From the NCBI GenBank assembly GCA_002269645.1, contig NIVC01001469.1, positions 1-60,196 of the forward strand: a stretch of DNA of 60,196 bases. The letters are read 5' to 3'. The notes under the pieces are model-generated. The model was not told the origin of the DNA and searched no databases. It saw only the letters and a list, made by a program, of their open reading frames with translations. Below are positions 12,686 through 48,810 of the stretch, one piece after another; the first letter of the stretch is position 1, and every line of letters begins with the position of its first letter. A program made the translations under genes and the position numbers. The stretch comes from Macrostomum lignano. Its lineage: Eukaryota.

Positions 12686-12850
12686 CTTAGAGACGAGTGA
12701 AATGTTGAATGAAAAGCATAATTAAAATTTTTTAATTGCACAAAACTTGAAGGTCAAATTTTGTTCCCATTCTAGGGAGGGAGGGTTGGAGAATAGAAAT
12801 GTGTGACAGAAATGGTAACACATAAAAGAGAATGAGGTTGACGAGGGCTC

Positions 12851-15800
12851 AGTCTGCGGATCTGAGAGGTAGGCGGCCTAGTTTGAGGAGATCTGAGAGG
12901 GTTACTTAGTCTGCGGATCTGAGAGGTAGGCGGCCTAGTTTGAGGAGATCTGAGAGGGTTACTTAGTCTGCGGATCTGAGAGGTTGGCGGCCTAGTTTGA
13001 GGAGATCTGAGAGGGTTACTTAGTCTGCGGATCTGAGAGAGGGTGGTACTTAGTCTGCGGATCTTAGAGGGTGGCGGCCTAGTTTGAGGAGATCTGAGAG
13101 GGGCGGCCTAGTCTGGGGATCTGAGAGGGGGCGGCCTAGTCTGGGGATCTGAGAGGGGGCGGCCTAGTCTGGGGATCTGAGAGGGGGCGGCCTAGTCTGG
13201 GGATCTGAGAGGGGGCGGCCTAGTCTGCAGATCTGAGAGGGGGCGGCCTAGTCTGCAGATCTGAGAGGGGGCGGCCTAGTCTGGGGATCTGAGAGGGGGC
13301 GGCCTAGTCTGGGGATCTGAGAGGGGGCGGCCTAGTCTGCAGATCTGAGAGGGGCGGCCTAGTCTGCGGATCTGAGAGGGTGGCGGCCTAGTCTGGGGAT
13401 CTGAGAGGGGACGGCCTAGTCTGGGGATCTGAGAGGTTGGTACTTAGTCTGCAGATCTGAGAGGGGGCGGCCTAGTCTGCAGATCTGAGAGGGGGCGGCC
13501 TAGTCTGCGGATCTGAGAGGGTGGCGGCCTAGTCTGGGGATCTGAGAGGGCACGGCCTAGTCTGGGGATCTGAGAGGTTGGTACTTAGTCTGCAGATCTG
13601 AGAGGGGGCGGCCTAGTCTGCAGATCTGAGAGAAAGGCGGCCTAGTCTGGGGATCTGAGAGGGGGCGGCCTAGTCTGGGGATCTGAGAGGGGGCGGCCTA
13701 GTCTGGGGATCTGAGAGGGGACGGCCTAGTCTGGGGATCTGAGAGGTTGGTACTTAGTCTGCAGATCTGAGAGGGGGCGGCCTAGTCTGCAGATCTGAGA
13801 GGGGGCGGCCTAGTCTGGGGATCTGAGAGGGGGCGGCCTAGTCTGGGGATCTGAGAGGGGGCGGCCTAGTCTGCAGATCTGAGAGGGGGCGGCCTAGTCT
13901 GCGGATCTGAGAGGGTGGCGGCCTAGTCTGGGGATCTGAGAGGGGACGGCCTAGTCTGCGGATCTGAGAGGGTGGCGGCCTAGTCTGGGGATCTGAGAGG
14001 GGACGGCCTAGTCTGGGGATCTGAGAGGGGTACTAGTCTGCAGATCTGAGAGGGGGCGGCCTAGTCTGCAGATCTGAGAGGGGGCGGCCTAGTCTGCAGA
14101 TCTGAGAGGGGGCGGCCTAGTCTGCGGATCTGAGAGGGGGCGGCCTAGTCTGGGATCTGAGAGGGGGCTAGTCTGCAGATCTGAGAGGGGGCGGCCTAGT
14201 CTGCAGATCTGAGAGGGGGCGGCCTAGTCTGCGGATCTGAGAGGGGGCGGCCTAGTCTGCAGATCTGAGAGGGGGCGGCCTAGTCTGGGGATCTGAGAGG
14301 GGACGGCCTAGTCTGCGATCTGAGAGGGGTACTAGTCTGCAGATCTGAGAGGGGGCGGCCTAGTCTGCAGATCTGAGAGGGGCGGCCTAGTCTGGGGATC
14401 TGAGAGGGGGCGGCCTAGTCTGGGGATCTGAGAGGGGGCGGCCTAGTCTGGGGATCTGAGAGGGGTACTAGTCTGCAGATCTGAGAGGGGGCGGCCTAGT
14501 CTGGATCTGAGAGGGGGCGGCCTAGTCTGGGGATCTGAGAGGGGGCGGCCTAGTCTGGGGATCTGAGAGGGGGCGGCCTAGTCTGCAGATCTGAGAGGGG
14601 GCGGCCTAGTCTGCAGATCTGAGAGGGGCGGCCTAGTCTGGGATCTGAGAGGGGCGGCCTAGTCTGGGGATCTGAGAGGGGGCGGCCTAGTCTGCAGATC
14701 TGAGAGGGGCGGCCTAGTCTGCGGATCTGAGAGGGGGCGGCCTAGTCTGGGGATCTGAGAGGGGACGGCCTAGTCTGGGGATCTGAGAGGTTGGTACTTA
14801 GTCTGCAGATCTGAGAGAAAGGCGGCCTAGTCTGCAGATCTGAGAGGGGGCGGCCTAGTCTGCGGATCTGAGAGGGGGCGGCCTAGTCTGGGGATCTGAG
14901 AGGGGGCCTAGTCTGCGGATCTGAGAGGGGTACTAGTCTGCAGATCTGAGAGGGGGCGGCCTAGTCTGCAGATCTGAGAGGGCGGCCTAGTCTGGGGATC
15001 TGAGAGGGGGCGGCCTAGTCTGGGGATCTGAGAGGGGACGGCCTAGTCTGGGATCTGAGAGGGGTACTTAGTCTGCAGATCTGAGAGGGGGCGGCCTAGT
15101 CTGCAGATCTGAGAGGGGGCGGCCTAGTCTGGGGATCTGAGAGGGGCGGCCTAGTCTGGGGATCTGAGAGGGGGCGGCCTAGTCTGCAGATCTGAGAGGG
15201 GGCGGCCTAGTCTGCGGATCTGAGAGGGTGGCGGCCTAGTCTGGGGATCTGAGAGGGGACGGCCTAGTCTGGGGATCTGAGAGGTTGGTACTTAGTCTGC
15301 AGATCTGAGAGGGGGCGGCCTAGTCTGCAGATCTGAGAGGGGGCGGCCTAGTCTGCGGATCTGAGAGGGGGCGGCCTAGTCTGGATCTGAGAGGGGCGGC
15401 CTAGTCTGGGGATCTGAGAGGGGCGGCCTAGTCTGCGATCTGAGAGGGGGCGGCCTAGTCTGCAGATCTGAGAGGGGGCGGCCTAGTCTGCGGATCTGAG
15501 AGGGGGCGGCCTAGTCTGGGGATCTGAGAGGGGACGGCCTAGTCTGGGGATCTGAGAGGTTGGTACTTAGTCTGCAGATCTGAGAGGGGGCGGCCTAGTC
15601 TGGATCTGAGAGGGGGCGGCCTAGTCCGGATCTGAGAGGGGGCGGCCTAGTCTGGGATCTGAGAGGGGCGGCCTAGTCTGGGATCTGAGAGGGGGCGGCC
15701 TAGTCTGCAGATCTGAGAGGGCGGCCTAGTCTGGGGATCTGAGAGGGGGCGGCCTAGTCTGGGATCTGAGAGGGGGCGGCCTAGTCTGGGGATCTGAGAG

Positions 15801-18800
15801 GGGACGGCCTAGTCTGGGATCTGAGAGGTTGGTACTTAGTCTGCAGATCTGAGAGGGGGCGGCCTAGTCTGCAGATCTGAGAGGGGGCGGCCTAGTCTGG
15901 GATCTGAGAGGGGGCGGCCTAGTCTGCAGATCTGAGAGGGGGCGGCCTAGTCTGCGGATCTGAGAGGGGCGGCCTAGTCTGGGGATCTGAGAGGGGACGG
16001 CCTAGTCTGGGATCTGAGAGGTTGGTACTTAGTCTGCAGATCTGAGAGGGGGCGGCCTAGTCTGCAGATCTGAGAGGGGGCGGCCTAGTCTGCGGATCTG
16101 AGAGGGGGCGGCCTAGTCTGCAGATCTGAGAGGGGGCGGCCTAGTCTGCGGATCTGAGAGGGGCGGCCTAGTCTGCGGATCTGAGAGGGGGCGGCCTAGT
16201 CTGCAGATCTGAGAGGGGGCGGCCTAGTCTGCGGATCTGAGAGGGGGCGGCCTAGTCTGGGGATCTGAGAGGGGACGGCCTAGTCTGGGGATCTGAGAGG
16301 GGTACTAGTCTGCAGATCTGAGAGGGGGCGGCCTAGTCTGCAGATCTGAGAGGGGCGGCCTAGTCTGCAGATCTGAGAGGGGCGGCCTAGTCTGGGGATC
16401 TGAGAGGGGGCGGCCTAGTCTGGGGATCTGAGAGGGGGCGGCCTAGTCTGGGGATCTGAGAGGGGGCGGCCTAGTCTGGATCTGAGAGGGGCGGCCTAGT
16501 CTGGGGATCTGAGAGGTTGGTACTTAGTCTGCAGATCTGAGAGGGCGGCCTAGTCTGCAGATCTGAGAGGGGCGGCCTAGTCTGGGATCTGAGAGGGGCG
16601 GCCTAGTCTGGGGATCTGAGAGGGGCGGCCTAGTCTGGATCTGAGAGGGGGCGGCCTAGTCTGCAGATCTGAGAGGGGGCGGCCTAGTCTGGGGATCTGA
16701 GAGGGGTACTAGTCTGCAGATCTGAGAGGGGGCGGCCTAGTCTGCAGATCTGAGAGGGGGCGGCCTAGTCTGCGGATCTGAGAGGGTGGCGGCCTAGTCT
16801 GGGGATCTGAGAGGGGACGGCCTAGTCTGGGGATCTGAGAGGTTGGTACTTAGTCTGCAGATCTGAGAGGGGGCGGCCTAGTCTGCAGATCTGAGAGGGC
16901 GGCCTAGTCTGGGATCTGAGAGGGGGCGGCCTAGTCTGGGGATCTGAGAGGGGACGGCCTAGTCTGGGGATCTGAGAGGTTGGTACTTAGTCTGCAGATC
17001 TGAGAGGGGGCGGCCTAGTCTGCAGATCTGAGAGGGGGCGGCCTAGTCTGGGATCTGAGAGGGGGCGGCCTAGTCTGGGGATCTGAGAGGGGCGGCCTAG
17101 TCTGCAGATCTGAGAGGGGCGGCCTAGTCTGCGGATCTGAGAGGGGGCGGCCTAGTCTGGGATCTGAGAGGGGACGGCCTAGTCTGGGGATCTGAGAGGG
17201 GTACTAGTCTGCAGATCTGAGAGGGGGCGGCCTAGTCTGCAGATCTGAGAGGGGCGGCCTAGTCTGCGGATCTGAGAGGGGGCGGCCTAGTCTGCAGATC
17301 TGAGAGGGGCGGCCTAGTCTGCGGATCTGAGAGGGGGCGGCCTAGTCTGCGGATCTGAGAGGGGCGGCCTAGTCTGCAGATCTGAGAGGGGGCGGCCTAG
17401 TCTGCGGATCTGAGAGGGGGCGGCCTAGTCTGGGGATCTGAGAGGGGACGGCCTAGTCTGGGGATCTGAGAGGTTGGTACTTAGTCTGCAGATCTGAGAG
17501 GGGGCGGCCTAGTCTGGATCTGAGAGGGGGCGGCCTAGTCCGGGGATCTGAGAGGGGGCGGCCTAGTCTGGGGATCTGAGAGGGGACGGCCTAGTCTGGG
17601 GATCTGAGAGGGGGCGGCCTAGTCTGCAGATCTGAGAGAAAGGCGGCCTAGTCTGGGGATCTGAGAGGGGGCGGCCTAGTCTGGGGATCTGAGAGGGGGC
17701 GGCCTAGTCTGGGGATCTGAGAGGGGACGGCCTAGTCTGGGGATCTGAGAGGTTGGTACTTAGTCTGCAGATCTGAGAGGGGGCGGCCTAGTCTGCAGAT
17801 CTGAGAGGGGGCGGCCTAGTCTGGGATCTGAGAGGGGGCGGCCTAGTCTGCAGATCTGAGAGGGGGCGGCCTAGTCTGCGGATCTGAGAGGGGGCGGCCT
17901 AGTCTGGGATCTGAGAGGGGACGGCCTAGTCTGGGGATCTGAGAGGGGTACTAGTCTGCAGATCTGAGAGGGGGCGGCCTAGTCTGCAGATCTGAGAGGG
18001 GGCGGCCTAGTCTGCGGATCTGAGAGGGGGCGGCCTAGTCTGCAGATCTGAGAGGGGCGGCCTAGTCTGCGGATCTGAGAGGGGCGGCCTAGTCTGCGAT
18101 CTGAGAGGGGCGGCCTAGTCTGCAGATCTGAGAGGGGGCCTAGTCTGCGGATCTGAGAGGGGGCGGCCTAGTCTGGGGATCTGAGAGGGGGCGGCCTAGT
18201 CTGGGATCTGAGAGGGGTACTTAGTCTGCAGATCTGAGAGGGGGCGGCCTAGTCTGCAGATCTGAGAGGGGGCGGCCTAGTCTGCAGATCTGAGAGGGGC
18301 GGCCTAGTCTGGGGATCTGAGAGGGGGCGGCCTAGTCTGGGGATCTGAGAGGGGGCGGCCTAGTCTGGGATCTGAGAGGGGCGGCCTAGTCTGCAGATCT
18401 GAGAGGGGGCGGCCTAGTCTGCAGATCTGAGAGGGGGCGGCCTAGTCTGGGATCTGAGAGGGGCGGCCTAGTCTGCAGATCTGAGAGGGGGCGGCCTAGT
18501 CTGCGGATCTGAGAGGGGGCGGCCTAGTCTGGGGATCTGAGAGGGGACGGCCTAGTCTGGGATCTGAGAGGTTGGTACTTAGTCTGCAGATCTGAGAGGG
18601 GGCGGCCTAGTCTGCAGATCTGAGAGGGCGGCCTAGTCTGGGGATCTGAGAGGGGGCGGCCTAGTCTGGGGATCTGAGAGGGGCGGCCTAGTCTGGGGAT
18701 CTGAGAGGTTGGTACTTAGTCTGCAGATCTGAGAGGGGGCGGCCTAGTCTGGATCTGAGAGGGGGCGGCCTAGTCTGGGGATCTGAGAGGGGGCGGCCTA

Positions 18801-21800
18801 GTCTGGGGATCTGAGAGGGGGCGGCCTAGTCTGCAGATCTGAGAGGGGCGGCCTAGTCTGCAGATCTGAGAGGGGGCGGCCTAGTCTGGGGATCTGAGAG
18901 GGGGCGGCCTAGTCTGGGGATCTGAGAGGGGGCGGCCTAGTCTGCAGATCTGAGAGGGGGCGGCCTAGTCTGGGGATCTGAGAGGGGGCGGCCTAGTCTG
19001 GGGATCTGAGAGGGGGCGGCCTAGTCTGGGATCTGAGAGGGGGCGGCCTAGTCTGGATCTGAGAGGGGCGGCCTAGTCTGCGGATCTGAGAGGGGGCGGC
19101 CTAGTCTGGGGATCTGAGAGGGGCGGCCTAGTCTGGGGATCTGAGAGGGGCTAGTCTGCAGATCTGAGAGGGGGCGGCCTAGTCTGCAGATCTGAGAGGG
19201 GGCGGCCTAGTCTGCAGATCTGAGAGGGGCGGCCTAGTCTGCGGATCTGAGAGGGGGCGGCCTAGTCTGCAGATCTGAGAGGGGCGGCCTAGTCTGCGGA
19301 TCTGAGAGGGGGCGGCCTAGTCTGGGGATCTGAGAGGGGCGGCCTAGTCTGGGGATCTGAGAGGGGTACTAGTCTGCAGATCTGAGAGGGGGCGGCCTAG
19401 TCTGCAGATCTGAGAGGGGGCGGCCTAGTCTGCAGATCTGAGAGGGGGCGGCCTAGTCTGGGATCTGAGAGGGGGCGGCCTAGTCTGGGGATCTGAGAGG
19501 GGGCGGCCTAGTCTGGGATCTGAGAGGGGGCGGCCTAGTCTGGGGATCTGAGAGGGGTACTTAGTCTGCAGATCTGAGAGGGGGCGGCCTAGTCTGCAGA
19601 TCTGAGAGGGGGCGGCCTAGTCTGCGATCTGAGAGGGGCGGCCTAGTCTGCAGATCTGAGAGGGGGCGGCCTAGTCTGGGATCTGAGAGGGGACGGCCTA
19701 GTCTGGGATCTGAGAGGTTGGTACTTAGTCTGCAGATCTGAGAGGGGGCGGCCTAGTCTGCAGATCTGAGAGGGCGGCCTAGTCTGGGGATCTGAGAGGG
19801 GGCGGCCTAGTCTGGGGATCTGAGAGGGGGCGGCCTAGTCTGGGATCTGAGAGGGGTACTAGTCTGCAGATCTGAGAGGGGGCGGCCTAGTCTGGGATCT
19901 GAGAGGGGGCGGCCTAGTCTGGGGATCTGAGAGGGGGCGGCCTAGTCTGGGATCTGAGAGGGGGCGGCCTAGTCTGCAGATCTGAGAGGGGGCGGCCTAG
20001 TCTGCAGATCTGAGAGGGGCGGCCTAGTCTGGGGATCTGAGAGGGGGCGGCCTAGTCTGGGGATCTGAGAGGGGGCGGCCTAGTCTGCAGATCTGAGAGG
20101 GGGCGGCCTAGTCTGCGGATCTGAGAGGGTGGCGGCCTAGTCTGGGGATCTGAGAGGGGACGGCCTAGTCTGGGGATCTGAGAGGTTGGTACTTAGTCTG
20201 CAGATCTGAGAGGGCGGCCTAGTCTGCAGATCTGAGAGGGGCGGCCTAGTCTGCGGATCTGAGAGGGGGCGGCCTAGTCTGGGGATCTGAGAGGGGACGG
20301 CCTAGTCTGGGGATCTGAGAGGTTGGTACTTAGTCTGCAGATCTGAGAGGGGGCGGCCTAGTCTGCAGATCTGAGAGGGGGCGGCCTAGTCTGGGGATCT
20401 GAGAGGGGGCGGCCTAGTCTGGGGATCTGAGAGGGGACGGCCTAGTCTGGGATCTGAGAGGGGTACTTAGTCTGCAGATCTGAGAGGGGGCGGCCTAGTC
20501 TGCAGATCTGAGAGGGGGCGGCCTAGTCTGGGGATCTGAGAGGGGGCGGCCTAGTCTGGGATCTGAGAGGGGGCGGCCTAGTCTGCAGATCTGAGAGGGG
20601 CGGCCTAGTCTGCGGATCTGAGAGGGGGCGGCCTAGTCTGGGGATCTGAGAGGGGCGGCCTAGTCTGGGGATCTGAGAGGGGCTAGTCTGCAGATCTGAG
20701 AGGGGGCGGCCTAGTCTGCAGATCTGAGAGGGGGCGGCCTAGTCTGCGGATCTGAGAGGGGGCGGCCTAGTCTGGGGATCTGAGAGGGGCGGCCTAGTCT
20801 GGGATCTGAGAGGGGCGGCCTAGTCTGCGATCTGAGAGGGGGCGGCCTAGTCTGCAGATCTGAGAGGGGGCGGCCTAGTCTGCGGATCTGAGAGGGGGCG
20901 GCCTAGTCTGGGGATCTGAGAGGGGACGGCCTAGTCTGGGGATCTGAGAGGGGTACTTAGTCTGCAGATCTGAGAGGGGGCGGCCTAGTCTGGGATCTGA
21001 GAGGGGGCGGCCTAGTCTGGGGATCTGAGAGGGGCGGCCTAGTCTGGGGATCTGAGAGGGGACGGCCTAGTCTGGGGATCTGAGAGGGGGCGGCCTAGTC
21101 TGCAGATCTGAGAGGGCGGCCTAGTCTGGGATCTGAGAGGGGCGGCCTAGTCTGGGGATCTGAGAGGGGGCGGCCTAGTCTGGGGATCTGAGAGGGGACG
21201 GCCTAGTCTGGGGATCTGAGAGGGGCTAGTCTGCAGATCTGAGAGGGGGCGGCCTAGTCTGCAGATCTGAGAGGGGCGGCCTAGTCTGGGGATCTGAGAG
21301 GGGGCGGCCTAGTCTGCAGATCTGAGAGGGGGCGGCCTAGTCTGCGGATCTGAGAGGTGGCGGCCTAGTCTGGGATCTGAGAGGGGACGGCCTAGTCTGG
21401 GGATCTGAGAGGGGTACTAGTCTGCAGATCTGAGAGGGGGCGGCCTAGTCTGCAGATCTGAGAGGGGCGGCCTAGTCTGCGGATCTGAGAGGGGGCGGCC
21501 TAGTCTGGATCTGAGAGGGGCGGCCTAGTCTGGGATCTGAGAGGGGCGGCCTAGTCTGCGATCTGAGAGGGGGCGGCCTAGTCTGCAGATCTGAGAGGGG
21601 GCGGCCTAGTCTGCGGATCTGAGAGGGGGCGGCCTAGTCTGGGGATCTGAGAGGGGCGGCCTAGTCTGGGATCTGAGAGGGGCTAGTCTGCAGATCTGAG
21701 AGGGGCGGCCTAGTCTGCAGATCTGAGAGGGGCGCCTAGTCTGCAGATCTGAGAGGGGCGGCCTAGTCTGGGGATCTGAGAGGGGGCGGCCTAGTCTGGG

Positions 21801-36800: not shown

Positions 36801-39800
36801 TCTGCAGATCTGAGAGGGGGCGGCCTAGTCTGGGGATCTGAGAGGGGGCGGCCTAGTCTGGGGATCTGAGAGGGGGCGGCCTAGTCTGGGGATCTGAGAG
36901 GGGGCGGCCTAGTCTGCAGATCTGAGAGGGGGCGGCCTAGTCTGCAGATCTGAGAGGGGCGGCCTAGTCTGGGGATCTGAGAGGGGGCGGCCTAGTCTGG
37001 GGATCTGAGAGGGGGCGGCCTAGTCTGCAGATCTGAGAGGGGGCGGCCTAGTCTGCGGATCTGAGAGGGTGGCGGCCTAGTCTGGGGATCTGAGAGGGGA
37101 CGGCCTAGTCTGGGGATCTGAGAGGTTGGTACTTAGTCTGCAGATCTGAGAGGGGGCGGCCTAGTCTGCAGATCTGAGAGGGGGCGGCCTAGTCTGCGGA
37201 TCTGAGAGGGTGGCGGCCTAGTCTGGGGATCTGAGAGGGGACGGCCTAGTCTGGGGATCTGAGAGGTTGGTACTTAGTCTGCAGATCTGAGAGGGGGCGG
37301 CCTAGTCTGCAGATCTGAGAGGGCGGCCTAGTCTGGGGATCTGAGAGGGGGCGGCCTAGTCTGGGGATCTGAGAGGGGACGGCCTAGTCTGGGGATCTGA
37401 GAGGTTGGTACTTAGTCTGCAGATCTGAGAGGGGGCGGCCTAGTCTGCAGATCTGAGAGGGGGCGGCCTAGTCTGGGGATCTGAGAGGGGGCGGCCTAGT
37501 CTGGGGATCTGAGAGGGGGCGGCCTAGTCTGCAGATCTGAGAGGGGGCGGCCTAGTCTGCGGATCTGAGAGGGGGCGGCCTAGTCTGGGGATCTGAGAGG
37601 GGTACTAGTCTGCAGATCTGAGAGGGGGCGGCCTAGTCTGCAGATCTGAGAGGGGGCGGCCTAGTCTGGGGATCTGAGAGGGGGCGGCCTAGTCTGGGGA
37701 TCTGAGAGGGGGCGGCCTAGTCTGCAGATCTGAGAGGGGGCGGCCTAGTCTGCGGATCTGAGAGGGGGCGGCCTAGTCTGGGGATCTGAGAGGGGACGGC
37801 CTAGTCTGGGGATCTGAGAGGTTGGTACTTAGTCTGCAGATCTGAGAGGGGGCGGCCTAGTCTGCAGATCTGAGAGGGGGCGGCCTAGTCTGCGGATCTG
37901 AGAGGGGGCGGCCTAGTCTGCAGATCTGAGAGGGGGCGGCCTAGTCTGGGGATCTGAGAGGGGCGGCCTAGTCTGCGGATCTGAGAGGGGGCGGCCTAGT
38001 CTGCAGATCTGAGAGGGGGCGGCCTAGTCTGCGGATCTGAGAGGGGGCGGCCTAGTCTGGGGATCTGAGAGGGGACGGCCTAGTCTGGGGATCTGAGAGG
38101 TTGGTACTTAGTCTGCAGATCTGAGAGGGGGCGGCCTAGTCTGGGGATCTGAGAGGGGGCGGCCTAGTCCGGGGATCTGAGAGGGGGCGGCCTAGTCTGG
38201 GGATCTGAGAGGGGACGGCCTAGTCTGGGGATCTGAGAGGGGGCGGCCTAGTCTGCAGATCTGAGAGAAAGGCGGCCTAGTCTGGGGATCTGAGAGGGGG
38301 CGGCCTAGTCTGGGGATCTGAGAGGGGGCGGCCTAGTCTGGGGATCTGAGAGGGGACGGCCTAGTCTGGGATCTGAGAGGTTGGTACTTAGTCTGCAGAT
38401 CTGAGAGGGGGCGGCCTAGTCTGCAGATCTGAGAGGGGGCGGCCTAGTCTGGGGATCTGAGAGGGGGCGGCCTAGTCTGCAGATCTGAGAGGGGGCGGCC
38501 TAGTCTGCGGATCTGAGAGGGTGGCGGCCTAGTCTGGGGATCTGAGAGGGGACGGCCTAGTCTGGGGATCTGAGAGGTTGGTACTTAGTCTGCAGATCTG
38601 AGAGGGGGCGGCCTAGTCTGCAGATCTGAGAGGGGGCGGCCTAGTCTGCGGATCTGAGAGGGGGCGGCCTAGTCTGCAGATCTGAGAGGGGGCGGCCTAG
38701 TCTGCGGATCTGAGAGGGGACGGCCTAGTCTGCGGATCTGAGAGGGGGCGGCCTAGTCTGCAGATCTGAGAGGGGGCGGCCTAGTCTGCGGATCTGAGAG
38801 GGTGGCGGCCTAGTCTGGGGATCTGAGAGGGGACGGCCTAGTCTGGGGATCTGAGAGGTTGGTACTTAGTCTGCAGATCTGAGAGGGGGCGGCCTAGTCT
38901 GCAGATCTGAGAGGGGGCGGCCTAGTCTGCAGATCTGAGAGGGGCGGCCTAGTCTGGGGATCTGAGAGGGGGCGGCCTAGTCTGGGGATCTGAGAGGGGG
39001 CGGCCTAGTCTGGGGATCTGAGAGGGGGCGGCCTAGTCTGCAGATCTGAGAGGGGCGGCCTAGTCTGCAGATCTGAGAGGGGGCGGCCTAGTCTGGGATC
39101 TGAGAGGGGGCGGCCTAGTCTGCAGATCTGAGAGGGGCGGCCTAGTCTGCGGATCTGAGAGGGGGCGGCCTAGTCTGGGGATCTGAGAGGGGACGGCCTA
39201 GTCTGCGGATCTGAGAGGTTGGTACTTAGTCTGCAGATCTGAGAGGGGGCGGCCTAGTCTGCAGATCTGAGAGGGCGGCCTAGTCTGGGGATCTGAGAGG
39301 GGGCGGCCTAGTCTGGGGATCTGAGAGGGGGCGGCCTAGTCTGGGGATCTGAGAGGTTGGTACTTAGTCTGCAGATCTGAGAGGGGGCGGCCTAGTCTGG
39401 GGATCTGAGAGGGGCGGCCTAGTCTGGGGATCTGAGAGGGGCGGCCTAGTCTGGGGATCTGAGAGGGGGCGGCCTAGTCTGCAGATCTGAGAGGGGGCGG
39501 CCTAGTCTGCAGATCTGAGAGGGGCGGCCTAGTCTGGGGATCTGAGAGGGGCGGCCTAGTCTGGGGATCTGAGAGGGGGCGGCCTAGTCTGCAGATCTGA
39601 GAGGGGGCGGCCTAGTCTGCGGATCTGAGAGGGTGGCGGCCTAGTCTGGGGATCTGAGAGGGGACGGCCTAGTCTGGGGATCTGAGAGGTTGGTACTTAG
39701 TCTGCAGATCTGAGAGGGGGCGGCCTAGTCTGCAGATCTGAGAGGGGGCGGCCTAGTCTGCGGATCTGAGAGGGTGGCGGCCTAGTCTGGGGATCTGAGA

Positions 39801-41886
39801 GGGGACGGCCTAGTCTGGGGATCTGAGAGGTTGGTACTTAGTCTGCAGATCTGAGAGGGGCGGCCTAGTCTGCAGATCTGAGAGGGCGGCCTAGTCTGGG
39901 GATCTGAGAGGGGGCGGCCTAGTCTGGGGATCTGAGAGGGGACGGCCTAGTCTGGGGATCTGAGAGGTTGGTACTTAGTCTGCAGATCTGAGAGGGGGCG
40001 GCCTAGTCTGCAGATCTGAGAGGGGGCGGCCTAGTCTGGGGATCTGAGAGGGGGCGGCCTAGTCTGGGGATCTGAGAGGGGGCGGCCTAGTCTGCAGATC
40101 TGAGAGGGGGCGGCCTAGTCTGCGGATCTGAGAGGGTGGCGGCCTAGTCTGGGGATCTGAGAGGGGGGCCTAGTCTGGGGATCTGAGAGGTTGGTACTTA
40201 GTCTGCAGATCTGAGAGGGGGCGGCCTAGTCTGCAGATCTGAGAGGGGGCGGCCTAGTCTGCGGATCTGAGAGGGGGCGGCCTAGTCTGCAGATCTGAGA
40301 GGGGGCGGCCTAGTCTGCGGATCTGAGAGGGGCGGCCTAGTCTGCGGATCTGAGAGGGGGCGGCCTAGTCTGCGGATCTGAGAGGGGGCGGCCTAGTCTG
40401 CAGATCTGAGAGGGGGCGGCCTAGTCTGCGGATCTGAGAGGGGGCGGCCTAGTCTGGGGATCTGAGAGGGGACGGCCTAGTCTGGGGATCTGAGAGGGGT
40501 ACTTAGTCTGCAGATCTGAGAGGGGGCGGCCTAGTCTGGGGATCTGAGAGGGGGCGGCCTAGTCTGGGGATCTGAGAGGGGGCGGCCTAGTCTGGGGATC
40601 TGAGAGGGGGCGGCCTAGTCTGCAGATCTGAGAGGGCGGCCTAGTCTGGGGATCTGAGAGGGGGCGGCCTAGTCTGGGGATCTGAGAGGGGGCGGCCTAG
40701 TCTGGGGATCTGAGAGGGGACGGCCTAGTCTGGGGATCTGAGAGGTTGGTACTTAGTCTGCAGATCTGAGAGGGGGCGGCCTAGTCTGCAGATCTGAGAG
40801 GGGGCGGCCTAGTCTGGGGATCTGAGAGGGGGCGGCCTAGTCTGCAGATCTGAGAGGGGGCGGCCTAGTCTGCGGATCTGAGAGGGTGGCGGCCTAGTCT
40901 GGGGATCTGAGAGGGGACGGCCTAGTCTGGGGATCTGAGAGGTTGGTACTTAGTCTGCAGATCTGAGAGGGGGCGGCCTAGTCTGCAGATCTGAGAGGGG
41001 GCGGCCTAGTCTGCGGATCTGAGAGGGGGCGGCCTAGTCTGCAGATCTGAGAGGGGCGGCCTAGTCTGCGGATCTGAGAGGGGACGGCCTAGTCTGCGGA
41101 TCTGAGAGGGGGCGGCCTAGTCTGCAGATCTGAGAGGGGGCGGCCTAGTCTGCGGATCTGAGAGGGTGGCGGCCTAGTCTGGGGATCTGAGAGGGGACGG
41201 CCTAGTCTGGGGATCTGAGAGGTTGGTACTTAGTCTGCAGATCTGAGAGGGGGCGGCCTAGTCTGCAGATCTGAGAGAAAGGCGGCCTAGTCTGGGGATC
41301 TGAGAGGGGGCGGCCTAGTCTGGGGATCTGAGAGGGGGCGGCCTAGTCTGGGGATCTGAGAGGGGACGGCCTAGTCTGGGGATCTGAGAGGTTGGTACTT
41401 AGTCTGCAGATCTGAGAGGGGGCGGCCTAGTCTGCAGATCTGAGAGGGGGCGGCCTAGTCTGCGGATCTGAGAGGGGGCGGCCTAGTCTGCAGATCTGAG
41501 AGGGGGCGGCCTAGTCTGCAGATCTGAGAGGGGGCGGCCTAGTCTGCGGATCTGAGAGGGTGGCGGCCTAGTCTGGGGATCTGAGAGGGGACGGCCTAGT
41601 CTGGGGATCTGAGAGGTTGGTACTTAGTCTGCAGATCTGAGAGGGGGCGGCCTAGTCTGCAGATCTGAGAGAAAGGCGGCCTAGTCTGGGGATCTGAGAG
41701 GGGGCGGCCTAGTCTGGGGATCTGAGAGGGGGCGGCCTAGTCTGGGGATCTGAGAGGGGGCGGCCTAGTCTGGGGATCTGAGAGGGGGCGGCCTAGTCTG
41801 GGGATCTGAGAGGGGGCGGCCTAGTCTGCGGATCTGAGAGGGGGGCGGCCTAGTCTGGGGATCTGAGAGGGGGGCGGCCTAGTCTG
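12851..41886 (+). repeat. Giant 28-bp G-rich tandem satellite, ~29.0 kb, roughly 1,040 units
   Basis: Consensus GAGAGGGGGCGGCCTAGTCTG(GG/CA/CG)GATCT. Recurrent variants: GAGAGGTTGGTACTTAGT, GAGAGGGGACGG, GAGAGGGTGGCGG, GAGAGAAAGGCGG. No ORFs, because TAG/TGA occur in every unit and the unit is not a multiple of 3. Confidence 0.99.
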
Positions 41887-42462
41887 AACAAAAGCCTAGA
41901 AATTAAAATGAAGGCTCAAGTGTAAATTAGAAGCATAAATACGAAGCCTTATGGTTTCTTCGTATATGCATAAGCTCAGGAATACTGAGTCGCAACACAG
42001 TGAGCACAGTGAGCACAAGACAGGGACATAGCAAGAAATAAGCGATTTATTGAAACAAAAGATTTGTGTTCCCTAAGTACAACGATTTCATAGTACGCCA
42101 ATCACTCTAGTAATTGGTTATATACTGGTAATCTGAGTATAATGCAGATTCGCTCGCATTTTTACAACCCCCAGAGTTAACTCAACAAATCAGTTACCAT
42201 GTGTACTTTATACAATAGTTAGATCTTTGCAACAAATTGCGTGTAGCTTGATAATATAAAATTTGTTGCATGCACGAAGCACTGAGACCTTGTGCTGGAC
42301 CTTAGATTAGAGTCCTGATACAGGCAAATGAGACCTAATAAGTCAAGTATTGAGAGGTACAGGGGAATGTCAAGCTAATGTAACAGAGCCGCTCACAAAC
42401 AAAAGCTTGAGAGCCAGGCCAAACGCAGTCTTATCTTGCCAGGCATGAAACAGAATAGATTG

Positions 42463-42654
42463 AGAGCAATGGGAAACTCAGGCTTAGATAATTGCTCCAG
42501 GGACAGCTGTGATGTCAACACAAATTTAGACCGTTTTTTTTCCTATGCGGAAAATGCCAAACCACAACAGGCACACGCTTCTTACAAGCTAATCTTTGTG
42601 TGTAGAGACACACCCTCTTTAGTTATTATGGCCATAACAGTTGAATAACAAATT
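42463..42654 (+). repeat. 192-bp direct repeat, left copy (apparent target-site duplication)
   Basis: AGAGCAATGGGAAACTCAGG...GTTGAATAACAAATT, identical by manual comparison to 46246-46437. The ORF track shows the same peptide MGNSGLDNC...MAITVE at both places. Confidence 0.95.
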
Positions 42655-45600
42655 AAATTAAAGTTCTATTAACGCATGGCTCAGATCAGACCTGTCCACC
42701 AGGGACATCTGTGTCATCCAGTCTGAAGACATACTCCCTGGGAGGACTACCCTCATCGCCTCGGTTTACCTACCGGGCGACGGCGAGATGATCCCAGTAG
42801 AGCTTGTCACACTGGTCGAGCTCTGCTCCACCAGAAACTATGAGCTGCTCGTGGCAGGTGACATCAATGCCCACCACACCCACTGGGGCAGTTCTGATAT
42901 AAACCAGAGAGGTGAAGACTTCCTGGCTTATATTGCTACTACAACCCTTGAGTTCTGTAACTCGGGTAGTACCCCTACCTTCAATAACGGACGCCGATCG
43001 GAGGTGCTGGATGCCACCCTCGCCACGCCCAGGCTCTTCCAGAGCACTAGGGAATGGCGGGTGCTTCCTGAGGCGTCCCTCTCCGATCACAAGTTCATCT
43101 CTTTCACGCTGGCCAGCGCCCGTAACGCAGGCCAGCTTTACTGGAAACGGAATGCTAGGAATACCGACTGGACCGCCTTCAGGCTTGCCCTGGAGGAGAC
43201 CTATCGTTGCACTAGCGCTCCAGTCTCCATCAACACCTGCGAAGAAGCAGATGAATTTGCGGCCGCACTTACGGACTCGCTCACTGCTGCCTTCGAAGCC
43301 TCATGCCCACTAAAGGCATATAAAGGCAAACAGTCGGCCCCATGGTGGAACCCGCAGCTTGGCGACCTCCGTCGCAGAGCCAAAAGGCTTCACCGCAGGG
43401 CCCAAAAAACTAAAAACCCGGCCGACCAAACCGCCTACCTGAACTCTATCCACGAGTTCAAGAGGCAGGTTAGGAACGCCAAAACCAACAAGTGGCGCGA
43501 ATACTGTGAGGAACTTGAGGGCTCCCGCCCCACCTCCAGAATCGTTAAAGCCCTCACCCTGGACAAAATGTCCAAACTCTCCTCAGTCAAGAGAGCCGAC
43601 GGCTCGCTCACTGAGAACCCAGGAGAAACACTGGAAGCGATGCTAACAGCGTTTTTCCCGAACGAGCCAGCTAGGCCCGGCCCCCCTGACCACTCAGTGG
43701 GCGGACACGTACTGGCTGACTCAATCATCACGGAGGACCGCGTTACTAAAGCTGTCTCCTCCTTCAAACCCTTCAAATCCCAGGACCGGACGGCGTTGTG
43801 CCAGCCTTCCTGCGGGAGGCGGTGAAATGCACCGGTTTCCTGCGGAACCTTTGCCGGCTTCTGAAAGCCTGCATTGTGCTCGGCTTTGTTCCGAAATCCT
43901 GGACCGAGGCCAAGGTGGTCTTTATCCCAAGCCTGGCCGACCGGACTACCGGTCCATTAAATCCTTCAGACCAATTAGCCTCACCTCCTCATTGGTGAAG
44001 CTGTTAGAGAGACTGGTGCTCTGGCGCCTCCTCTCTGTGGAACTGAAGAACAAGCCGCTCAGTGAGAACCAGCATGCCTTTCGGGCAGGCAGGTCCACGG
44101 AGAGCGCGCTTCACGTTCTGGTTGACATGCTGGAGAAAGCCGTTCTTGGTAATGGCTACGCTCTCGCTGTCTTCCTCGACATTGTTGGAGCCTTCGATAA
44201 TGTCCTCTTTGAGGCCTTTGACAGAGCTCTACGTGCTAGAGGAACCCACTCGCACCTCACCCGGTGGATCATGTATATGATCAGCCACCGTACTGCCACC
44301 GCACACCTGTTGGGCCACCAACGGACGGTAACCGTCTGCAAAGGCAGCCCCCAGGGCGGTGTCCTCTCTCCAGTTCTCTGGAACATGGTCATCGATGAGC
44401 TCCTCCAGGACAGCCATCTTGACCCCATCCTCAAGGTCGGTTACGCCGATGATGTCACAGCCGTGGCATCCGGACCGTCACCTGAAACCCTTAGAGATCT
44501 TTTGCAAAACTTCATTCGCTCTGCTGAACGTTGGGCGGACAGGTGCGGCCTCAGGCTCTCCGAGACCAAAACTGTCGCGATCATGTTCACCAGCAGGGTA
44601 AACTGGCGTATTCGCCCACTAAAGCTTTACGGGGTGGAAATTCCATCCTGCAAGCAAACCAAGTGTCTCGGCGTTACGCTGGACCACCGGCTGAGCTGGT
44701 CCACCCACGTCCAGGCCAAAACCAAAAAAGCCCTCGCGATTCTTGCGCAGCTGCGCAGAGCCGTCGGCACCACCTGGGGCCTCACCCCAAAGCGTCTCTG
44801 GTGGATCTATACCGCAATGGTCCGACCGGCCGTTACATACGCCGGCCTGGTCTGGACCAGCGCCTTGCAGATTAAAACCTGCCACGAAGCCCTCAAAAAG
44901 GTGCAGGGACGTGCGTGCCGCATGATCCTGAATGCCCCGCTCTCTGCTCCCTTTGACGGCCTCAACGCCTTTCTCTGCCTCCCGCCTCTGGACATCTTTG
45001 TCCGTCGCGAGGCTGCTAAAACCACCCGCCGGCTCATCGAGGCTGGTGTTAGCTTCAAGCCACAAAGAGCGATGGCGAAGCGCAAGCTCCTGCCGCACTC
45101 TGACCTGTGCCTTAAAGTTCTGGAGGAGAGTGGGAGTGCGGCTGTCCTTTCGGACGCTGAACCGCGCTCCCTCAACCTCTACCAACGCTTCAAGGTCACG
45201 ATCCCCTCCAGGGAGAACGCCAACGACAGCTGGGCCCCTCAGGAGGTTCACTGCTTCACTGACGGATCCTCCAAAGACGGTTTATCCGGCTTTGGAGTCT
45301 GCATCCTTATCAACGGCCGCGTGATTGCTACTCACGCCCAACACACTGGCAGACTCTCCAGCGTCTTCCAGAATGAAGTCCTTGCCATCAGCTCCTGTGC
45401 AGCTGAGCTCCACCGCAAGGACTTCAAGGACAGAAGAATCTTCTTCCACTCTGACAGCCAGGCCGCTTTACAGGCCCTGTGTCACACCACTACGAACTCC
45501 CGAACAGTCCGCGACTGTATCGGGCAGCTCAACAAGCTGGCTCGGAGGAACACCGTCCGGCTCACGTGGATCCCAGGACACGCCGGCTTCAAAGGTAACG

Positions 45601-46245
45601 AGCTCGCCGACTCCCTCGCTAAGGCGGGCTGTTCCGGCTCGCCCCTTGGCCCCGTGCCCCTGGCCCCCATCCCCGCCACAGTCATTAATCGTCAGATTAA
45701 CGACTGGGCGGACATCCTGCACTTGCGCAGATGGGATGGTATCTCCAACTGCCGCCAATCTCGTGCGGCAGTGCCCAATCCGTCCCTCAAGCTGCGGAGA
45801 ATCCTTTTGAATCAAAATCGAAAAGATATCCGCGCTCTCACTATGACCTTCACAGGTCACGGTTGCTTTGCCAGGCACTGCTTCCTCCGATGTGTTCGCC
45901 GGAGTGAACTCTGCCCCTTCTGCAGCCTCGAGAATGAAGATGCCATGCACTTCGTCTGCTACTGCCCGGCCTTCAACCGAGACCGGCTCAACCACCTCGG
46001 GCCCAACCCGTCCCTGGACGACGTTTGCCGGCCCGAGAACATCCCACGGCTCATCCGGTTCCTCCGGGCCACCAAGCGAGCCTCCGTCTTCCCCACCGAA
46101 GACAACGCTGCAGACAGGACCGGCAGACCTCCCTGACCGGCCCCGCGCCCTAGCCTATGCGGGTCTTTCAGGGATTAGCGGAATGGGCGACGCTCGCCTC
46201 CCCGCTGCGTCTTCGGACCGCCCTGCAGCTAAGTCAAGTAAGTCA
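42655..46245 (+). mobile_element. 5'-truncated non-LTR retrotransposon (LINE) with APE endonuclease, RT, RNase H and C-terminal CCHC knuckle; I-group, LOA/R1/Tad1-like
   Basis: The pol-like frame starts abruptly inside the APE domain right after the left repeat. It is followed by a ~95-nt 3' UTR and a short tandem tail TAAGTCAAGTAAGTCAAG abutting the right repeat. It is GC-rich relative to the AT-rich flanks and antisense to the host aldolase intron. Clade assignment is from domain architecture only. Confidence 0.95.
42662..46136 (+). CDS. Retrotransposon ORF2 (APE-RT-RNaseH-CCHC), split by two 1-nt deletions at ~43780 and ~43928
   Basis: APE: LIASVYLP, VAGDINAHHTHWGS, TPTF..G...LDATL, LSDH. 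Linker: PWWN, KSPGPDG (restored). RT: VVFIPKPG (restored), FRPISLTS, QHAFRAGRST, FLDIVGAFDNV, GSPQGGVLSPVLWN, GYADD. RNase H: CFTDGS, NEVLAI, HSDSQAAL, WIPGHAGFKGNELADSLAK. Knuckle: CPFCSLENEDAMHFVCYC. Confidence 0.93.
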
Positions 46246-46437
46246 AGAGCAATGGGAAACTCAGGCTTAGATAATTGCTCCAGGGACAGCTGTGATGTCA
46301 ACACAAATTTAGACCGTTTTTTTTCCTATGCGGAAAATGCCAAACCACAACAGGCACACGCTTCTTACAAGCTAATCTTTGTGTGTAGAGACACACCCTC
46401 TTTAGTTATTATGGCCATAACAGTTGAATAACAAATT
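46246..46437 (+). repeat. 192-bp direct repeat, right copy (apparent target-site duplication)
   Basis: Identical to 42463-42654. It begins immediately after the element's AAGTC tail and diverges from the left copy right after ...AACAAATT. Confidence 0.95.
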
Positions 46438-46814
46438 TTCATGATAAACAAACACAAACTTTTATGCACCTTTTTGTTAAAAATGTTTTTGTTAAACTGT
46501 GCACTATATCACTATATTTTCCATCTTTCTCTTGTCTATATAGTGCTCTGTCTAAAAAATATTTAATTTCAAACCATATGAGTGGCAGTATCAACTGTTC
46601 AAAATTATGATTGAGCTGATAAAGCCAGAGTCTAACAGGTTTTCAAATCTAAAAAGGATTAAAATAAATAGAATAAAATAAACAAAAACCAATATACTTT
46701 CTGCTCTCTGTCTTTCTTCCAAGTTAAATTTTTTTGACATTGTGAACTCTAAGTAGCTATTTTAACCTCATGGCCAACAAACTATCCTCAGCGCAACAAT
46801 AAAAAAGCAATTAC

Positions 46815-46926
46815 CAGTGCTTTCATCAGCAGCCAAAATTCCACGACCAGGTGCAACAATAGCATTTGCAATGTCCCTTAGCTCTTTTTGCTTCTTAGCA
46901 CTTAGGTATTCAGCAAACTGAGGCAT
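46815..46926 (-). CDS. ALDO: Fructose-bisphosphate aldolase class I, exon 1 (N-terminal 37 codons + 1 nt)
   Basis: Reverse complement reads [38 protein letters not shown]|gtaatt. It is 112 nt, phase 1, and joins exactly to ctaag|GA ACC TGC GGC AAG at 12685 (GTCGKRF). The spliced total is 1,101 nt = 366 aa + stop, a normal aldolase length. Too short for the ORF track. Confidence 0.9.
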
Positions 46927-48499: not shown

Positions 48500-48810
48500 C
48501 AGCCTTGAAATCTCATTTATACCCCGTGAGCCTTGACATCTCAGCTATTCCCTCCGTAAGCCTTAACATGTCAGCGATGGCCCCATAAACCTTGAAATCT
48601 AAAAAATCCCCTGTTATTCTGTTAACCTTGAAACCCGATAAAATATAACCCTCAACCCACACCTGACCTAAACCTAACTTTAACCCAACCTAAAGCCTTG
48701 AAATCTCAGCAATTCTTCTCCCCTAAGCCTTGACATTTTAGTGATTCCTTCTTTAAGAATCAAGCACTATAACGATTTCCACCAAGCTTTGACATTGTAG
48801 CAATTCCCAA
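48500..48810 (+). repeat. Degenerate ~29-bp direct repeats with core AGCCTTGA(A/C)AT
   Basis: Recurrent agccttgaaatctca, agccttgacatctca, agccttaacatgtca, aaccttgaaatcta, aagccttgacatt, aagctttgacatt. Confidence 0.5.

What the first reader, a model, noticed from the sequence alone, without database searches (positions are those of the whole stretch)
12686..46814. Core glycolytic gene with a 34-kb first intron that is ~85% satellite DNA
Seen: aldolase exon 1 (112 nt) is separated from exon 2 by 34,129 nt, of which 29 kb is one 28-bp satellite and 3.6 kb a LINE. The other two aldolase introns are 98 and 180 nt, and ABCA introns are all under 800 nt. Known: an intron after coding nt 112 (DEST-G, phase 1) is, from memory, also present in vertebrate aldolase genes, which supports the join. 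Satellite-filled giant introns are best known from Drosophila Y-loop fertility genes. Inference: a normally highly expressed housekeeping gene must transcribe ~1,000 satellite copies per mRNA, which would create an abundant nuclear C-rich repeat RNA and an intron delay. Alternatively this copy is silenced or uses another first exon.
Basis: partly seen in the sequence, partly recalled or inferred. Interest (0 to 1): 0.75.

Follow-up and report, generated by a model that had tools for sequence, protein, structure and literature searches.

The report
Giant minisatellite inside flatworm aldolase intron
One of three near-identical copies of an aldolase gene in the flatworm Macrostomum lignano really has a 34-kb first intron made mostly of a 28-bp tandem repeat, but this is a length-variable intronic minisatellite of a known kind in a repeat-rich, triplicated genome, and the gene model is already in GenBank.

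Summary
Exon 1 is 46926-46815 (112 nt) and intron 1 is 46814-12686 (34,129 nt, GT..AG). It holds a 29,036-bp array of about 1,060 28-bp units (85%) and a 3,591-bp antisense LINE. The window is the whole contig NIVC01001469.1 of Macrostomum lignano assembly Mlig_3_7. GenBank already carries this exon 1-exon 2 join (PAA67626.1), from a transcript-derived annotation. Four results support the join: the frame, the same phase-1 intron position in the paralogue, oyster and Lingula, the same low exon-1 GC3 in the paralogue, and identical synteny in three contigs. A misjoin of the flanks is therefore excluded. Two other near-identical copies, probably homeologs, carry the same array at the same site with only 224 and 161 units and no LINE. 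The array is thus an intronic hypervariable minisatellite (VNTR). Its closest analogue is the human CACNA1C 30-bp VNTR (3-30 kb), not the megabase Drosophila Y-loops. Whether this copy is the expressed one, and the exact array length in a draft PacBio assembly, remain open. Two details deserve follow-up. The array carries about 985 consensus-like decoy 3' splice sites and no donor motif. Only this copy keeps the canonical aldolase C-terminus.

The parts
46927..46947 (-). Short 5' leader that the deposited 5'-partial CDS [12 protein letters not shown] (L)KYFEST. It lies directly after TAG/AG at 46950-46948, which is a candidate spliced-leader acceptor.
   Evidence: Sequence. N-termini of P0121, P0001 and P0122. 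Spliced leader sequence ending in ATG from PMC8629364. The acceptor role is inferred, not shown.
46815..46926 (-). Aldolase exon 1, 112 nt: ATG through ...AADEST + G (phase 1). GC3 is 0.27.
12686..46814 (-). Intron 1, 34,129 nt, GTAATT...TCTAAG.
46246..46437 (.). Copy A of a perfect 192-bp direct duplication flanking the LINE (target-site duplication).
   Evidence: 100% identity over 192 bp. The sequence is single-copy in the empty site of g2.
42655..46245 (+). 5'-truncated non-LTR retrotransposon, antisense to the gene. ORFs are 42788-43825 (C-terminal half of the APE endonuclease) and 43827-46136 (RT + RNase H), separated by a stop codon. The 3' tail is (TAAGTCAAG)2. It is absent from copies g2 and g3.
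42463..42654 (.). Copy B of the 192-bp direct duplication.
12851..41886 (-). 28-bp minisatellite array. The sense-strand unit is AGGCCGCCCCCTCTCAGATCCGCAGACT. About 1,057-1,060 units in 75 variants with a weak 5-unit periodicity. The sense strand is 45% C. It ends 180 nt upstream of exon 2, measured from the last TCAGATC anchor, in all three copies.
12219..12685 (-). Aldolase exon 2 (467 nt).
11779..12120 (-). Aldolase exon 3 (342 nt).
11419..11598 (-). Aldolase exon 4 (180 nt including the stop). The GGGG run at 11463-11466 is GGG in copies g2 and g3, which frameshifts their last 14 codons.

Best explanation
This is a real locus: copy g1 of the class I fructose-bisphosphate aldolase gene Mlig011175 of Macrostomum lignano. 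Its ancient phase-1 first intron has been inflated by two passenger events. The first is expansion of a GC-rich, strand-asymmetric 28-bp hypervariable minisatellite (VNTR) that sits at the same intronic site in all three near-identical copies, with 161, 224 and about 1,060 units. The second, in this copy only, is insertion of a dead, 5'-truncated antisense LINE. Inferred: the array grew and shrank by the usual minisatellite mechanisms, namely unequal exchange, gene conversion and replication slippage. Inferred: the intron is removed by ordinary cis-splicing from the exon 1 donor to the conserved AAG acceptor. Three properties would make the array tolerable. Its sense strand has no GTRAG donor motif, so the roughly 985 pyrimidine-tract+CAG decoy acceptors cannot be paired into exons. 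The RNA and non-template strand are C-rich, an orientation that disfavours R-loops. Gene dosage is buffered by two other copies and a second aldolase paralogue. Shown: the anatomy, the copy-number differences, the conserved intron position and a transcript-derived gene model with this join. Inferred: passenger status, the splicing logic, and which copy is expressed.
For: The window is the whole contig NIVC01001469.1 of M. lignano Mlig_3_7 and carries the deposited model PAA67626.1. That annotation was derived from RNA-seq and de novo transcripts (PMC5730564). The same array lies 180 nt upstream of exon 2 in g2 (L001, 223 units, intron 7,617 nt) and g3 (L005, 161 units, intron 5,718 nt). Unit-level maps share both ends: g2 units 1-185 correspond to g1 units 1-209, and the last 16-37 units are shared. 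About 800 extra units lie between them in g1. Flanks differ by only 0.03-0.35% mismatches. The array has 75 interspersed unit variants and no internal block of 95% identity or more. The LINE is present only in g1 and has a 192-bp target-site duplication. Intron position is conserved in the paralogue, oyster and Lingula. The exon-1 GC3 dip is shared with the paralogue. The sense strand of the array has 0 GTRAG and 985 [CT]6+CAG sites. The species' donor and acceptor motifs come from PMC8629364. M. lignano has three subgenomes that differ mostly by long indels (PMC10733133), and 15% of the genome is simple or tandem repeats (PMC5730564). The protein is full length and canonical.
Against: No copy-specific expression data could be reached. 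Exons 1-3 are identical in the three copies, so the transcript-derived model would be projected onto all of them. The 29-kb length rests on one draft Canu/PacBio contig. Many unit differences are homopolymer-length differences, which could be read errors. I could not scan the M. lignano genome, so 'locus-specific' rests only on absence from the three paralogue loci. The expected g1-only presence of a canonical C-terminus is a single-base call in a G run.
Confidence: 0.7

Rival explanations
1. The gene structure is right, but the 29-kb array length is substantially wrong. It could be over-extended or mis-threaded by the assembler in a draft PacBio assembly, and the true array could resemble the 4.5-6.3 kb arrays of the other two copies.
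For: Mlig_3_7 is a Canu v1.4 assembly of older PacBio data polished with Pilon. REAPR rated only about 64% of its bases error-free (PMC5730564). 36% of the assembly length lies in chimeric scaffolds (PMC10733133). Shifted self-alignments of the array are about 90% identical in every register, which makes read overlaps hard. Much of the unit variation is homopolymer length.
Against: The array has no internal near-identical duplicated blocks. The unit map is non-periodic beyond a weak 5-unit signal. Both array ends match g2 and g3 in register, and the middle is not a concatenation of their arrays. Collapse of g2 and g3 is at least as likely an artefact as expansion of g1.
Confidence: 0.2
2. This copy is transcriptionally silent or decaying. 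Aldolase mRNA comes from g2, g3 or the paralogue Mlig029764, and the giant array plus LINE reflect relaxed constraint on a redundant homeolog.
For: Redundancy is high: three copies of this gene and three of a paralogue that is 85% identical. g1 alone has accumulated both a LINE and about 800 extra units. The transcript evidence does not discriminate between copies.
Against: The g1 CDS is intact with canonical splice sites, and exons 1-3 are identical to the other copies. g1 is the only copy whose C-terminus aligns with solved aldolases through the terminal Tyr. g2 and g3 carry a frameshift there.
Confidence: 0.2
3. The array is functional. It might act as a regulatory VNTR, as an intron-delay element, or as a source of C/U-rich repeat RNA that sequesters pyrimidine-tract or poly(C)-binding proteins.
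For: The array is retained at the same site in all three copies. Every unit carries a CCCCCUCUC tract. The array RNA folds somewhat better than shuffles, z = -2.7. Human intronic VNTRs of this size, such as CACNA1C TRACT, are reported to affect expression (abstracts listed).
Against: Copy number varies 6.6-fold between otherwise near-identical copies, and the unit maps have turned over, which looks like neutral minisatellite behaviour. The paralogue lacks the array. Rfam gives no match. The array has no ORFs. 34 kb adds only minutes of transcription.
Confidence: 0.07

Closest known systems
Large intronic VNTRs in humans, in particular the CACNA1C intron 3 30-bp repeat 'TRACT' (bioRxiv 10.1101/311795; PMC11118589; PMC13131567)
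   Same: The unit is about 30 bp. The array lies inside an intron of a conserved gene. Array length spans about 3-30 kb between alleles or copies. Variant units are interspersed and define structural types. The array is transcribed as part of the pre-mRNA.
   Different: The host is a flatworm and the host gene is a glycolytic enzyme. The comparison here is between three copies in one assembly, not a population. No expression or phenotype association is known. The unit sequence is unrelated.
Classical GC-rich hypervariable minisatellites such as human MS32 or CEB1 (from my own knowledge)
   Same: Units of 10-100 bp. High GC (64%) with strong strand asymmetry (GC skew 0.40). Interspersed variant repeats. 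Shared array ends with large internal length differences.
   Different: 29 kb is at the extreme upper end for a minisatellite. Meiotic instability, hotspot association and polarity are untested here.
Satellite-filled gigantic introns of Drosophila Y-loop fertility genes kl-3, kl-5 and ks-1 (PMC6508621; PMC11207136)
   Same: The intron is dominated by tandem repeats that must be transcribed to make the mRNA. The exons are small relative to the intron.
   Different: Y-loop introns are hundreds of kb to megabases of simple 5-10 bp satellites. They are Y-linked, spermatocyte-specific and need dedicated RNA-binding factors. Here the intron is 34 kb with a 28-bp unit in a housekeeping-type gene, in a hermaphrodite without sex chromosomes, and the other copies have 6-8 kb introns.
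Metazoan class I fructose-bisphosphate aldolase genes
   Same: Full-length PF00274 match. End-to-end alignment with human aldolase C including the AADES, KVDKG, KWR, VEPE and LLKPNM motifs and the C-terminal Tyr. The phase-1 intron after DEST|G is shared with oyster, Lingula and the M. lignano paralogue.
   Different: Intron 1 is 34 kb, against 0.28 kb in oyster, 1.9 kb in Lingula and 1.8-3.5 kb in the paralogue.

Membership tests
Minisatellite / VNTR | Head-to-tail tandem array of a 10-100 bp unit | tested here: met
   28-bp unit, 1,060 copies, TRF score 42,330. Unit lengths run 23-31 nt with a mode of 28.
Minisatellite / VNTR | Copy number differs between homologous copies or alleles at the same site | tested here: met
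   1,057, 223 and 161 units at the identical intronic site in g1, g2 and g3. Caveat: all three come from one draft assembly.
Minisatellite / VNTR | Interspersed variant repeats whose maps are partly shared between copies | tested here: met
   75 variants, with adjacent units identical only 7% of the time. The 5' and 3' unit blocks are shared between copies.
Minisatellite / VNTR | Single-locus rather than dispersed or heterochromatic | not testable with these tools
   The array is present only in the three copies of this gene and absent from the three paralogue loci. No tool could scan the M. lignano genome.
Satellite DNA in the strict sense | Abundant genome-wide family in long, often heterochromatic arrays at several loci | not testable with these tools
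   One 29-kb array and two of 4.5-6.3 kb at one orthologous site. Genomic abundance is unknown.
Y-loop-type intron gigantism | Intron of hundreds of kb to Mb, more than 1,000 times the typical intron | tested here: not met
   34.1 kb, about 25-30 times the species' mean intron of 1.1-1.4 kb (PMC5730564).
Y-loop-type intron gigantism | Sex-chromosome-linked, germline-specific expression programme with dedicated RNA-binding factors | not tested
   No expression data could be reached.
Class I fructose-bisphosphate aldolase (PF00274) | Full-length match to the family profile above the curated cut-off | tested here: met
   587 bits against a cut-off of 22.2, covering profile positions 1-349 of 349.
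Class I fructose-bisphosphate aldolase (PF00274) | Catalytic motifs (Asp33 in AADES, Lys107, Lys146, Glu187, Schiff-base Lys229 in LLKPNM, C-terminal Tyr) | tested here: met
   All are aligned and identical to human aldolase C, 1xfb. The residue roles come from my own knowledge. Asp33 lies in exon 1, so exon 1 is required.
Non-LTR (LINE) retrotransposon | APE endonuclease + reverse transcriptase (+ RNase H), 5' truncation and a target-site duplication | tested here: met
   PF14529, PF03372 (C-terminal half only), PF00078 and PF00075. 192-bp perfect flanking duplication and an empty site in g2 and g3.

The most novel reading that the evidence does not exclude
The copy with the giant intron is the main, or the only fully functional, Mlig011175 aldolase copy, because it alone keeps the canonical C-terminus. 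Every mRNA would then require transcription of about 1,000 C/U-rich units that each carry a consensus-like 3' splice site. The locus would be a natural array of about 1,000 decoy acceptors upstream of a weak AAG acceptor in an organism that also does spliced-leader trans-splicing. Its intron RNA might form nuclear repeat-RNA bodies or titrate pyrimidine-tract or poly(C)-binding proteins. Array length would then tune aldolase output between subgenomes.
Probability: 0.1. Interest if true: 0.6.

Novelty: new member of a known kind. Interest (0 to 1): 0.33.

Why it matters
As it stands, this is a clean, well-anchored example of how far an intronic minisatellite can expand inside an intact housekeeping-type gene. 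It also shows how strongly the three M. lignano copies differ by repeat indels while their unique sequence is nearly identical. It is a practical warning for annotation and RNA-seq mapping in this model flatworm, because gene models that span the array depend on a generous maximum intron length. An older prediction (UniRef A0A1I8I951) starts at exon 2 and lacks exon 1. If the copy is expressed, it offers a natural test of how the spliceosome ignores about 1,000 strong-looking acceptors. It would also be a tractable VNTR-in-intron model in an animal with transgenesis.

Tried and rejected
(1) Chimeric join suspected from codon usage. Exon 1 GC3 is 0.27 against 0.67-0.78 in exons 2-4. Rejected, because the paralogue, whose intron 1 is only 1.8-3.5 kb, shows the same dip of 0.40 against 0.86-0.89.

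(2) Misassembly joining unrelated flanks. Rejected, because three contigs share the synteny.

(3) Assembly stutter inside the array. No off-diagonal block of 95% identity or more, and all shifted registers are about 90% identical. Not supported, though the length is still unverified.

(4) An alternative first exon near exon 2. Only 165 nt lie between the array and exon 2, with no aldolase-like ORF, and the window has only one exon-1-like hit.

(5) Spliced leader joined directly to exon 2. The leader's ATG would be out of frame, and the first in-frame Met is at residue 164. Rejected as a route to functional enzyme; this is reasoning.

(6) Origin of the array from the LINE. Rejected, because the LINE is absent from g2 and g3, which have the array.

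(7) Relationship to the other 28-bp array at 58924-60095. The cyclic alignment score is 16 against a shuffle mean of 8.6 and maximum of 21. Not significant.

(8) Canonical G-quadruplex motifs. None on either strand with loops of 7 nt or less.

(9) Rfam. No match.

(10) Expression evidence. 'Mlig011175' appears in no held paper. The supplements held for PMC5730564, PMC8629364 and PMC5173321 contain nothing on aldolase. The exact 366-aa protein is not in the protein collection. The Wasik 2015 genome paper is not held.
Full report
OBSERVATION. Tandem Repeats Finder reports one 28-bp array at 12851-41886: 1,060 copies, 88% matches, score 42,330. GC is 0.63-0.65 and GC skew about +0.40 on the plus strand throughout the array. 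On the minus strand an ATG at 46926 opens a 112-nt exon that ends ...GAA AGC ACT G|GTAATT at 46815. After ...TCTCTAAG| at 12686 the frame continues as G|GA ACC TGC GGC AAG.... Joining four exons gives a 1,101-nt CDS and a 366-aa protein. The exons are 46926-46815, 12685-12219, 12120-11779 and 11598-11419. The introns are 34,129, 98 and 180 nt. The array is 85.1% of intron 1. The protein matches Pfam PF00274 over the whole profile (E=9.5e-177). It aligns end to end with human aldolase C, including the catalytic motifs and the C-terminal tyrosine. tblastn finds only one exon-1-like segment in the window. Between the array and exon 1, plus-strand ORFs (antisense to the gene) encode the C-terminal half of an APE endonuclease (42788-43825) and RT plus RNase H (43827-46136), so this is a non-LTR retrotransposon.

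WHERE IT COMES FROM. The spliced protein hits Macrostomum lignano proteins at 100% identity. An exact cluster look-up shows three deposited proteins, BOX15_Mlig011175g1, g2 and g3, on contigs of 60,196, 37,512 and 61,235 bp. The 60,196-bp contig, NIVC01001469.1 of assembly GCA_002269645.1 (Mlig_3_7), is the window itself. The deposited gene spans 11419-46944. The deposited protein P0121 reads [10 protein letters not shown]...AADESTGTCGKRF..., which is exon 1 joined to exon 2 preceded by six codons of translated leader. The GenBank annotation of Mlig_3_7 was built from a genome-guided transcriptome: StringTie/TACO on RNA-seq plus BLAT-mapped de novo transcripts, cut at experimentally mapped trans-splice and poly(A) sites (PMC5730564). 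The join is therefore transcript-derived and already public. No held paper mentions this gene.

IS THE JOIN RIGHT? There are four independent supports.

(i) The frame is continuous and the ends are GT..AG.

(ii) The paralogue Mlig029764 is 85% identical and present as three copies (L002-L004). It has an intron at exactly the same codon, 1.8-3.5 kb long. Crassostrea virginica (...GAA TCT ACT G|GTAAGA) and Lingula anatina (...GAA TCC ACA G|GTAAGT) have it too, with introns of about 0.28 and 1.9 kb.

(iii) I suspected a chimera because exon 1 has GC3 0.27 and exons 2-4 have 0.67-0.78. The paralogue shows the same contrast, 0.40 against 0.86-0.89. The dip is therefore a shared property of this gene family's first exon.

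(iv) Two other contigs carry the same order: Sec1-family gene, aldolase exon 1, 28-bp array, exons 2-4, ABCA gene. Their unique flanks are 99.2-99.9% identical to the window. A misjoin of the two array flanks is excluded.

An mRNA starting at exon 2 by spliced-leader addition would not make aldolase. Exon 2 begins in phase 1, so the leader's terminal ATG (leader sequence from PMC8629364) would be out of frame. Exon 1 also carries the AADES motif.

THE THREE COPIES. Intron 1 is 34,129 nt in g1 (the window), 7,617 nt in g2 (L001) and 5,718 nt in g3 (L005). In each copy the last array anchor lies 180 nt upstream of exon 2. The arrays have 1,057, 223 and 161 anchored units. I compared the arrays as strings of unit variants. 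g2 units 1-185 align with g1 units 1-209. The last 16-37 units are shared between copies. g3's last 72 units match g2's. About 800 units in the middle of g1 have no counterpart.

The three contigs are distinct haplotypes. g1 alone has the 3,591-bp LINE (42655-46245), flanked by a perfect 192-bp direct duplication (42463-42654 and 46246-46437) of a sequence that is single-copy in g2. g2 alone has a 1.5-kb insertion upstream. This fits the published picture of M. lignano DV1. It has three homeologous subgenomes (S, L1, L2) that are highly similar at small scale but differ by about a third of their length through long indels (PMC10733133). Simple and tandem repeats make up 15% of the genome (PMC5730564). 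The window contains five further minisatellite arrays. I have not shown that g1, g2 and g3 correspond to S, L1 and L2. Their mismatch divergence of 0.03-0.35% is lower than the published average of about 2%.

ANATOMY OF THE ARRAY. There are 75 distinct unit variants. Adjacent units are identical only 7% of the time, and there is a weak 5-unit periodicity. No off-diagonal block reaches 95% identity, and every shifted register is about 90% identical. Much of the unit-length variation (25-29 nt) lies in C-runs and may partly be PacBio error. Substitution variants are clearly real, for example TG/CC/CG at one position and an AAGTACCAACC variant.

On the strand transcribed into aldolase pre-mRNA the array is 45% C and 19% G. 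It contains no GTRAG, the species' donor motif (PMC8629364), and only 195 GT dinucleotides. It has 2,113 CAG trinucleotides, and at 985 sites six or more pyrimidines directly precede a CAG. The remaining 31 kb of the window has 20 such sites on both strands together. The authentic intron 1 acceptor is a non-consensus AAG (CTCGTCTCTAAG|G), and the paralogue also uses AAG. Use of the last decoys, 207-321 nt upstream of exon 2, would introduce stop codons. Neither strand has a canonical G-quadruplex motif with loops of 7 nt or less. A 280-nt piece of array RNA folds slightly better than shuffles, z = -2.7, through short palindromes. Rfam finds nothing in the window.

MOST LIKELY EXPLANATION (confidence about 0.7). 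A hypervariable intronic minisatellite that predates the divergence of the three copies has expanded about five- to seven-fold in this copy. A dead LINE then added 3.8 kb, counting its target-site duplication. The intron is removed by ordinary cis-splicing. The array looks tolerable for three reasons: it offers acceptors but no donors, so no exon can be defined inside it; its orientation gives a C-rich RNA, which disfavours R-loops (my own knowledge, not tested here); and aldolase dosage is heavily buffered. The anatomy, the copy-number variation and the conserved intron position are shown. The tolerance argument and the expansion mechanism are inferred.

RIVALS.

(a) The array length is an assembly error (about 0.2). 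The assembly is draft Canu/PacBio, REAPR rated 64% of bases error-free, and many scaffolds are chimeric. Against this, nothing inside the array looks duplicated or stitched.

(b) The copy is silent and the mRNA comes from g2, g3 or the paralogue (about 0.2). The transcript evidence cannot discriminate copies. Against this, g2 and g3 share a 1-bp deletion in a G run (window 11463-11466) that replaces the last 14 residues, including the conserved ...HxY end. Only g1 keeps the canonical C-terminus. That single-base difference could itself be a polishing artefact.

(c) The array has a function of its own (about 0.07). Nothing here requires one.

COMPARISON WITH KNOWN SYSTEMS. The closest analogue is a large intronic VNTR such as the human CACNA1C 30-bp repeat, 3-30+ kb long with interspersed variants (10.1101/311795; PMC11118589; PMC13131567). 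More generally it resembles GC-rich hypervariable minisatellites. The Drosophila Y-loop genes (PMC6508621) share only the idea of transcribing repeats inside an intron. Their defining scale of hundreds of kb to Mb is not met, and their germline programme is untested here. Whether the 28-mer is a genome-wide satellite family could not be tested. It is absent from the three paralogue loci.

VERDICT. The feature is real and accurately described, and the exon join is correct and already annotated. It is one of three copies, and its extreme size is an expansion of a shared VNTR. The strong functional inferences (obligatory transcription of 1,000 units, abundant repeat RNA, intron delay) are untested and weakened by the redundancy. 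Novelty: a new member of a known kind. Interest is moderate to low at 0.33. It would rise if copy-specific RNA data showed that this copy supplies the functional enzyme.

Noticed in passing
window 42463-42654 and 46246-46437: The g1-only LINE is flanked by a perfect 192-bp direct duplication of sequence that is single-copy in g2. This is an unusually long target-site duplication for a non-LTR retrotransposon.
   Followed up: partly
window 11463-11466 (exon 4); L001 about 18960; L005 about 17070: Copies g2 and g3 share a 1-bp deletion (GGGG to GGG) that frameshifts the last 14 codons and removes the conserved aldolase C-terminal ...HxY. Only the giant-intron copy is canonical. It could be a real variant or a homopolymer polishing error.
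   Followed up: partly
window 46815-46926; L002-L004 10001-10112: Exon 1 has much lower GC3 (0.27; 0.40 in the paralogue) than the later exons (0.67-0.89) in both aldolase paralogues. The compositional step falls at the first intron.
   Followed up: partly
window 46927-46950: The deposited 5'-partial CDSs begin within 1-6 nt after a TAG/AG that lies 21 nt upstream of the ATG. This is what a spliced-leader acceptor would give. The M. lignano leader ends in ATG, which would be in frame and add 8 residues (MLKYFEST) if it were used as the start.
   Followed up: no
window 12851-41886, minus strand: There are 985 sites of six or more pyrimidines followed by CAG, against 20 in the other 31 kb on both strands. 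The array has no GTRAG. The authentic acceptor at 12686 is a weak AAG, and the paralogue's is also AAG.
   Followed up: partly
window 48501-48600, 49082-49899, 54357-54987, 57126-58330, 58924-60095: Five other minisatellite arrays, with units of 30, 23 (or 91), 37, 48 and 28 bp. The contig stops about 100 bp after the last one, which may be why the assembly broke there. The 37-bp unit contains a consensus GTGAGT and appears to lie within the annotated span of the Sec1-family gene.
   Followed up: no
L001 4388-5896, against window about 51040-51045: A 1.5-kb insertion upstream of the gene is present only in copy g2. Together with the LINE it shows that the three contigs are three different haplotypes or homeologs.
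   Followed up: partly
window 6093-7445 (minus strand): The gene downstream of aldolase is annotated as only 306 aa on this contig. At the same relative position on the g3 contig it is a 2,153-aa ABCA transporter. The model here may be truncated or disrupted.
   Followed up: no
UniRef A0A1I8I951 (P0123): A UniRef prediction of this aldolase, which I take to come from the older ML2 assembly, starts exactly at exon 2 (TCGKRF...). That gene prediction missed exon 1, presumably because of the array.
   Followed up: no
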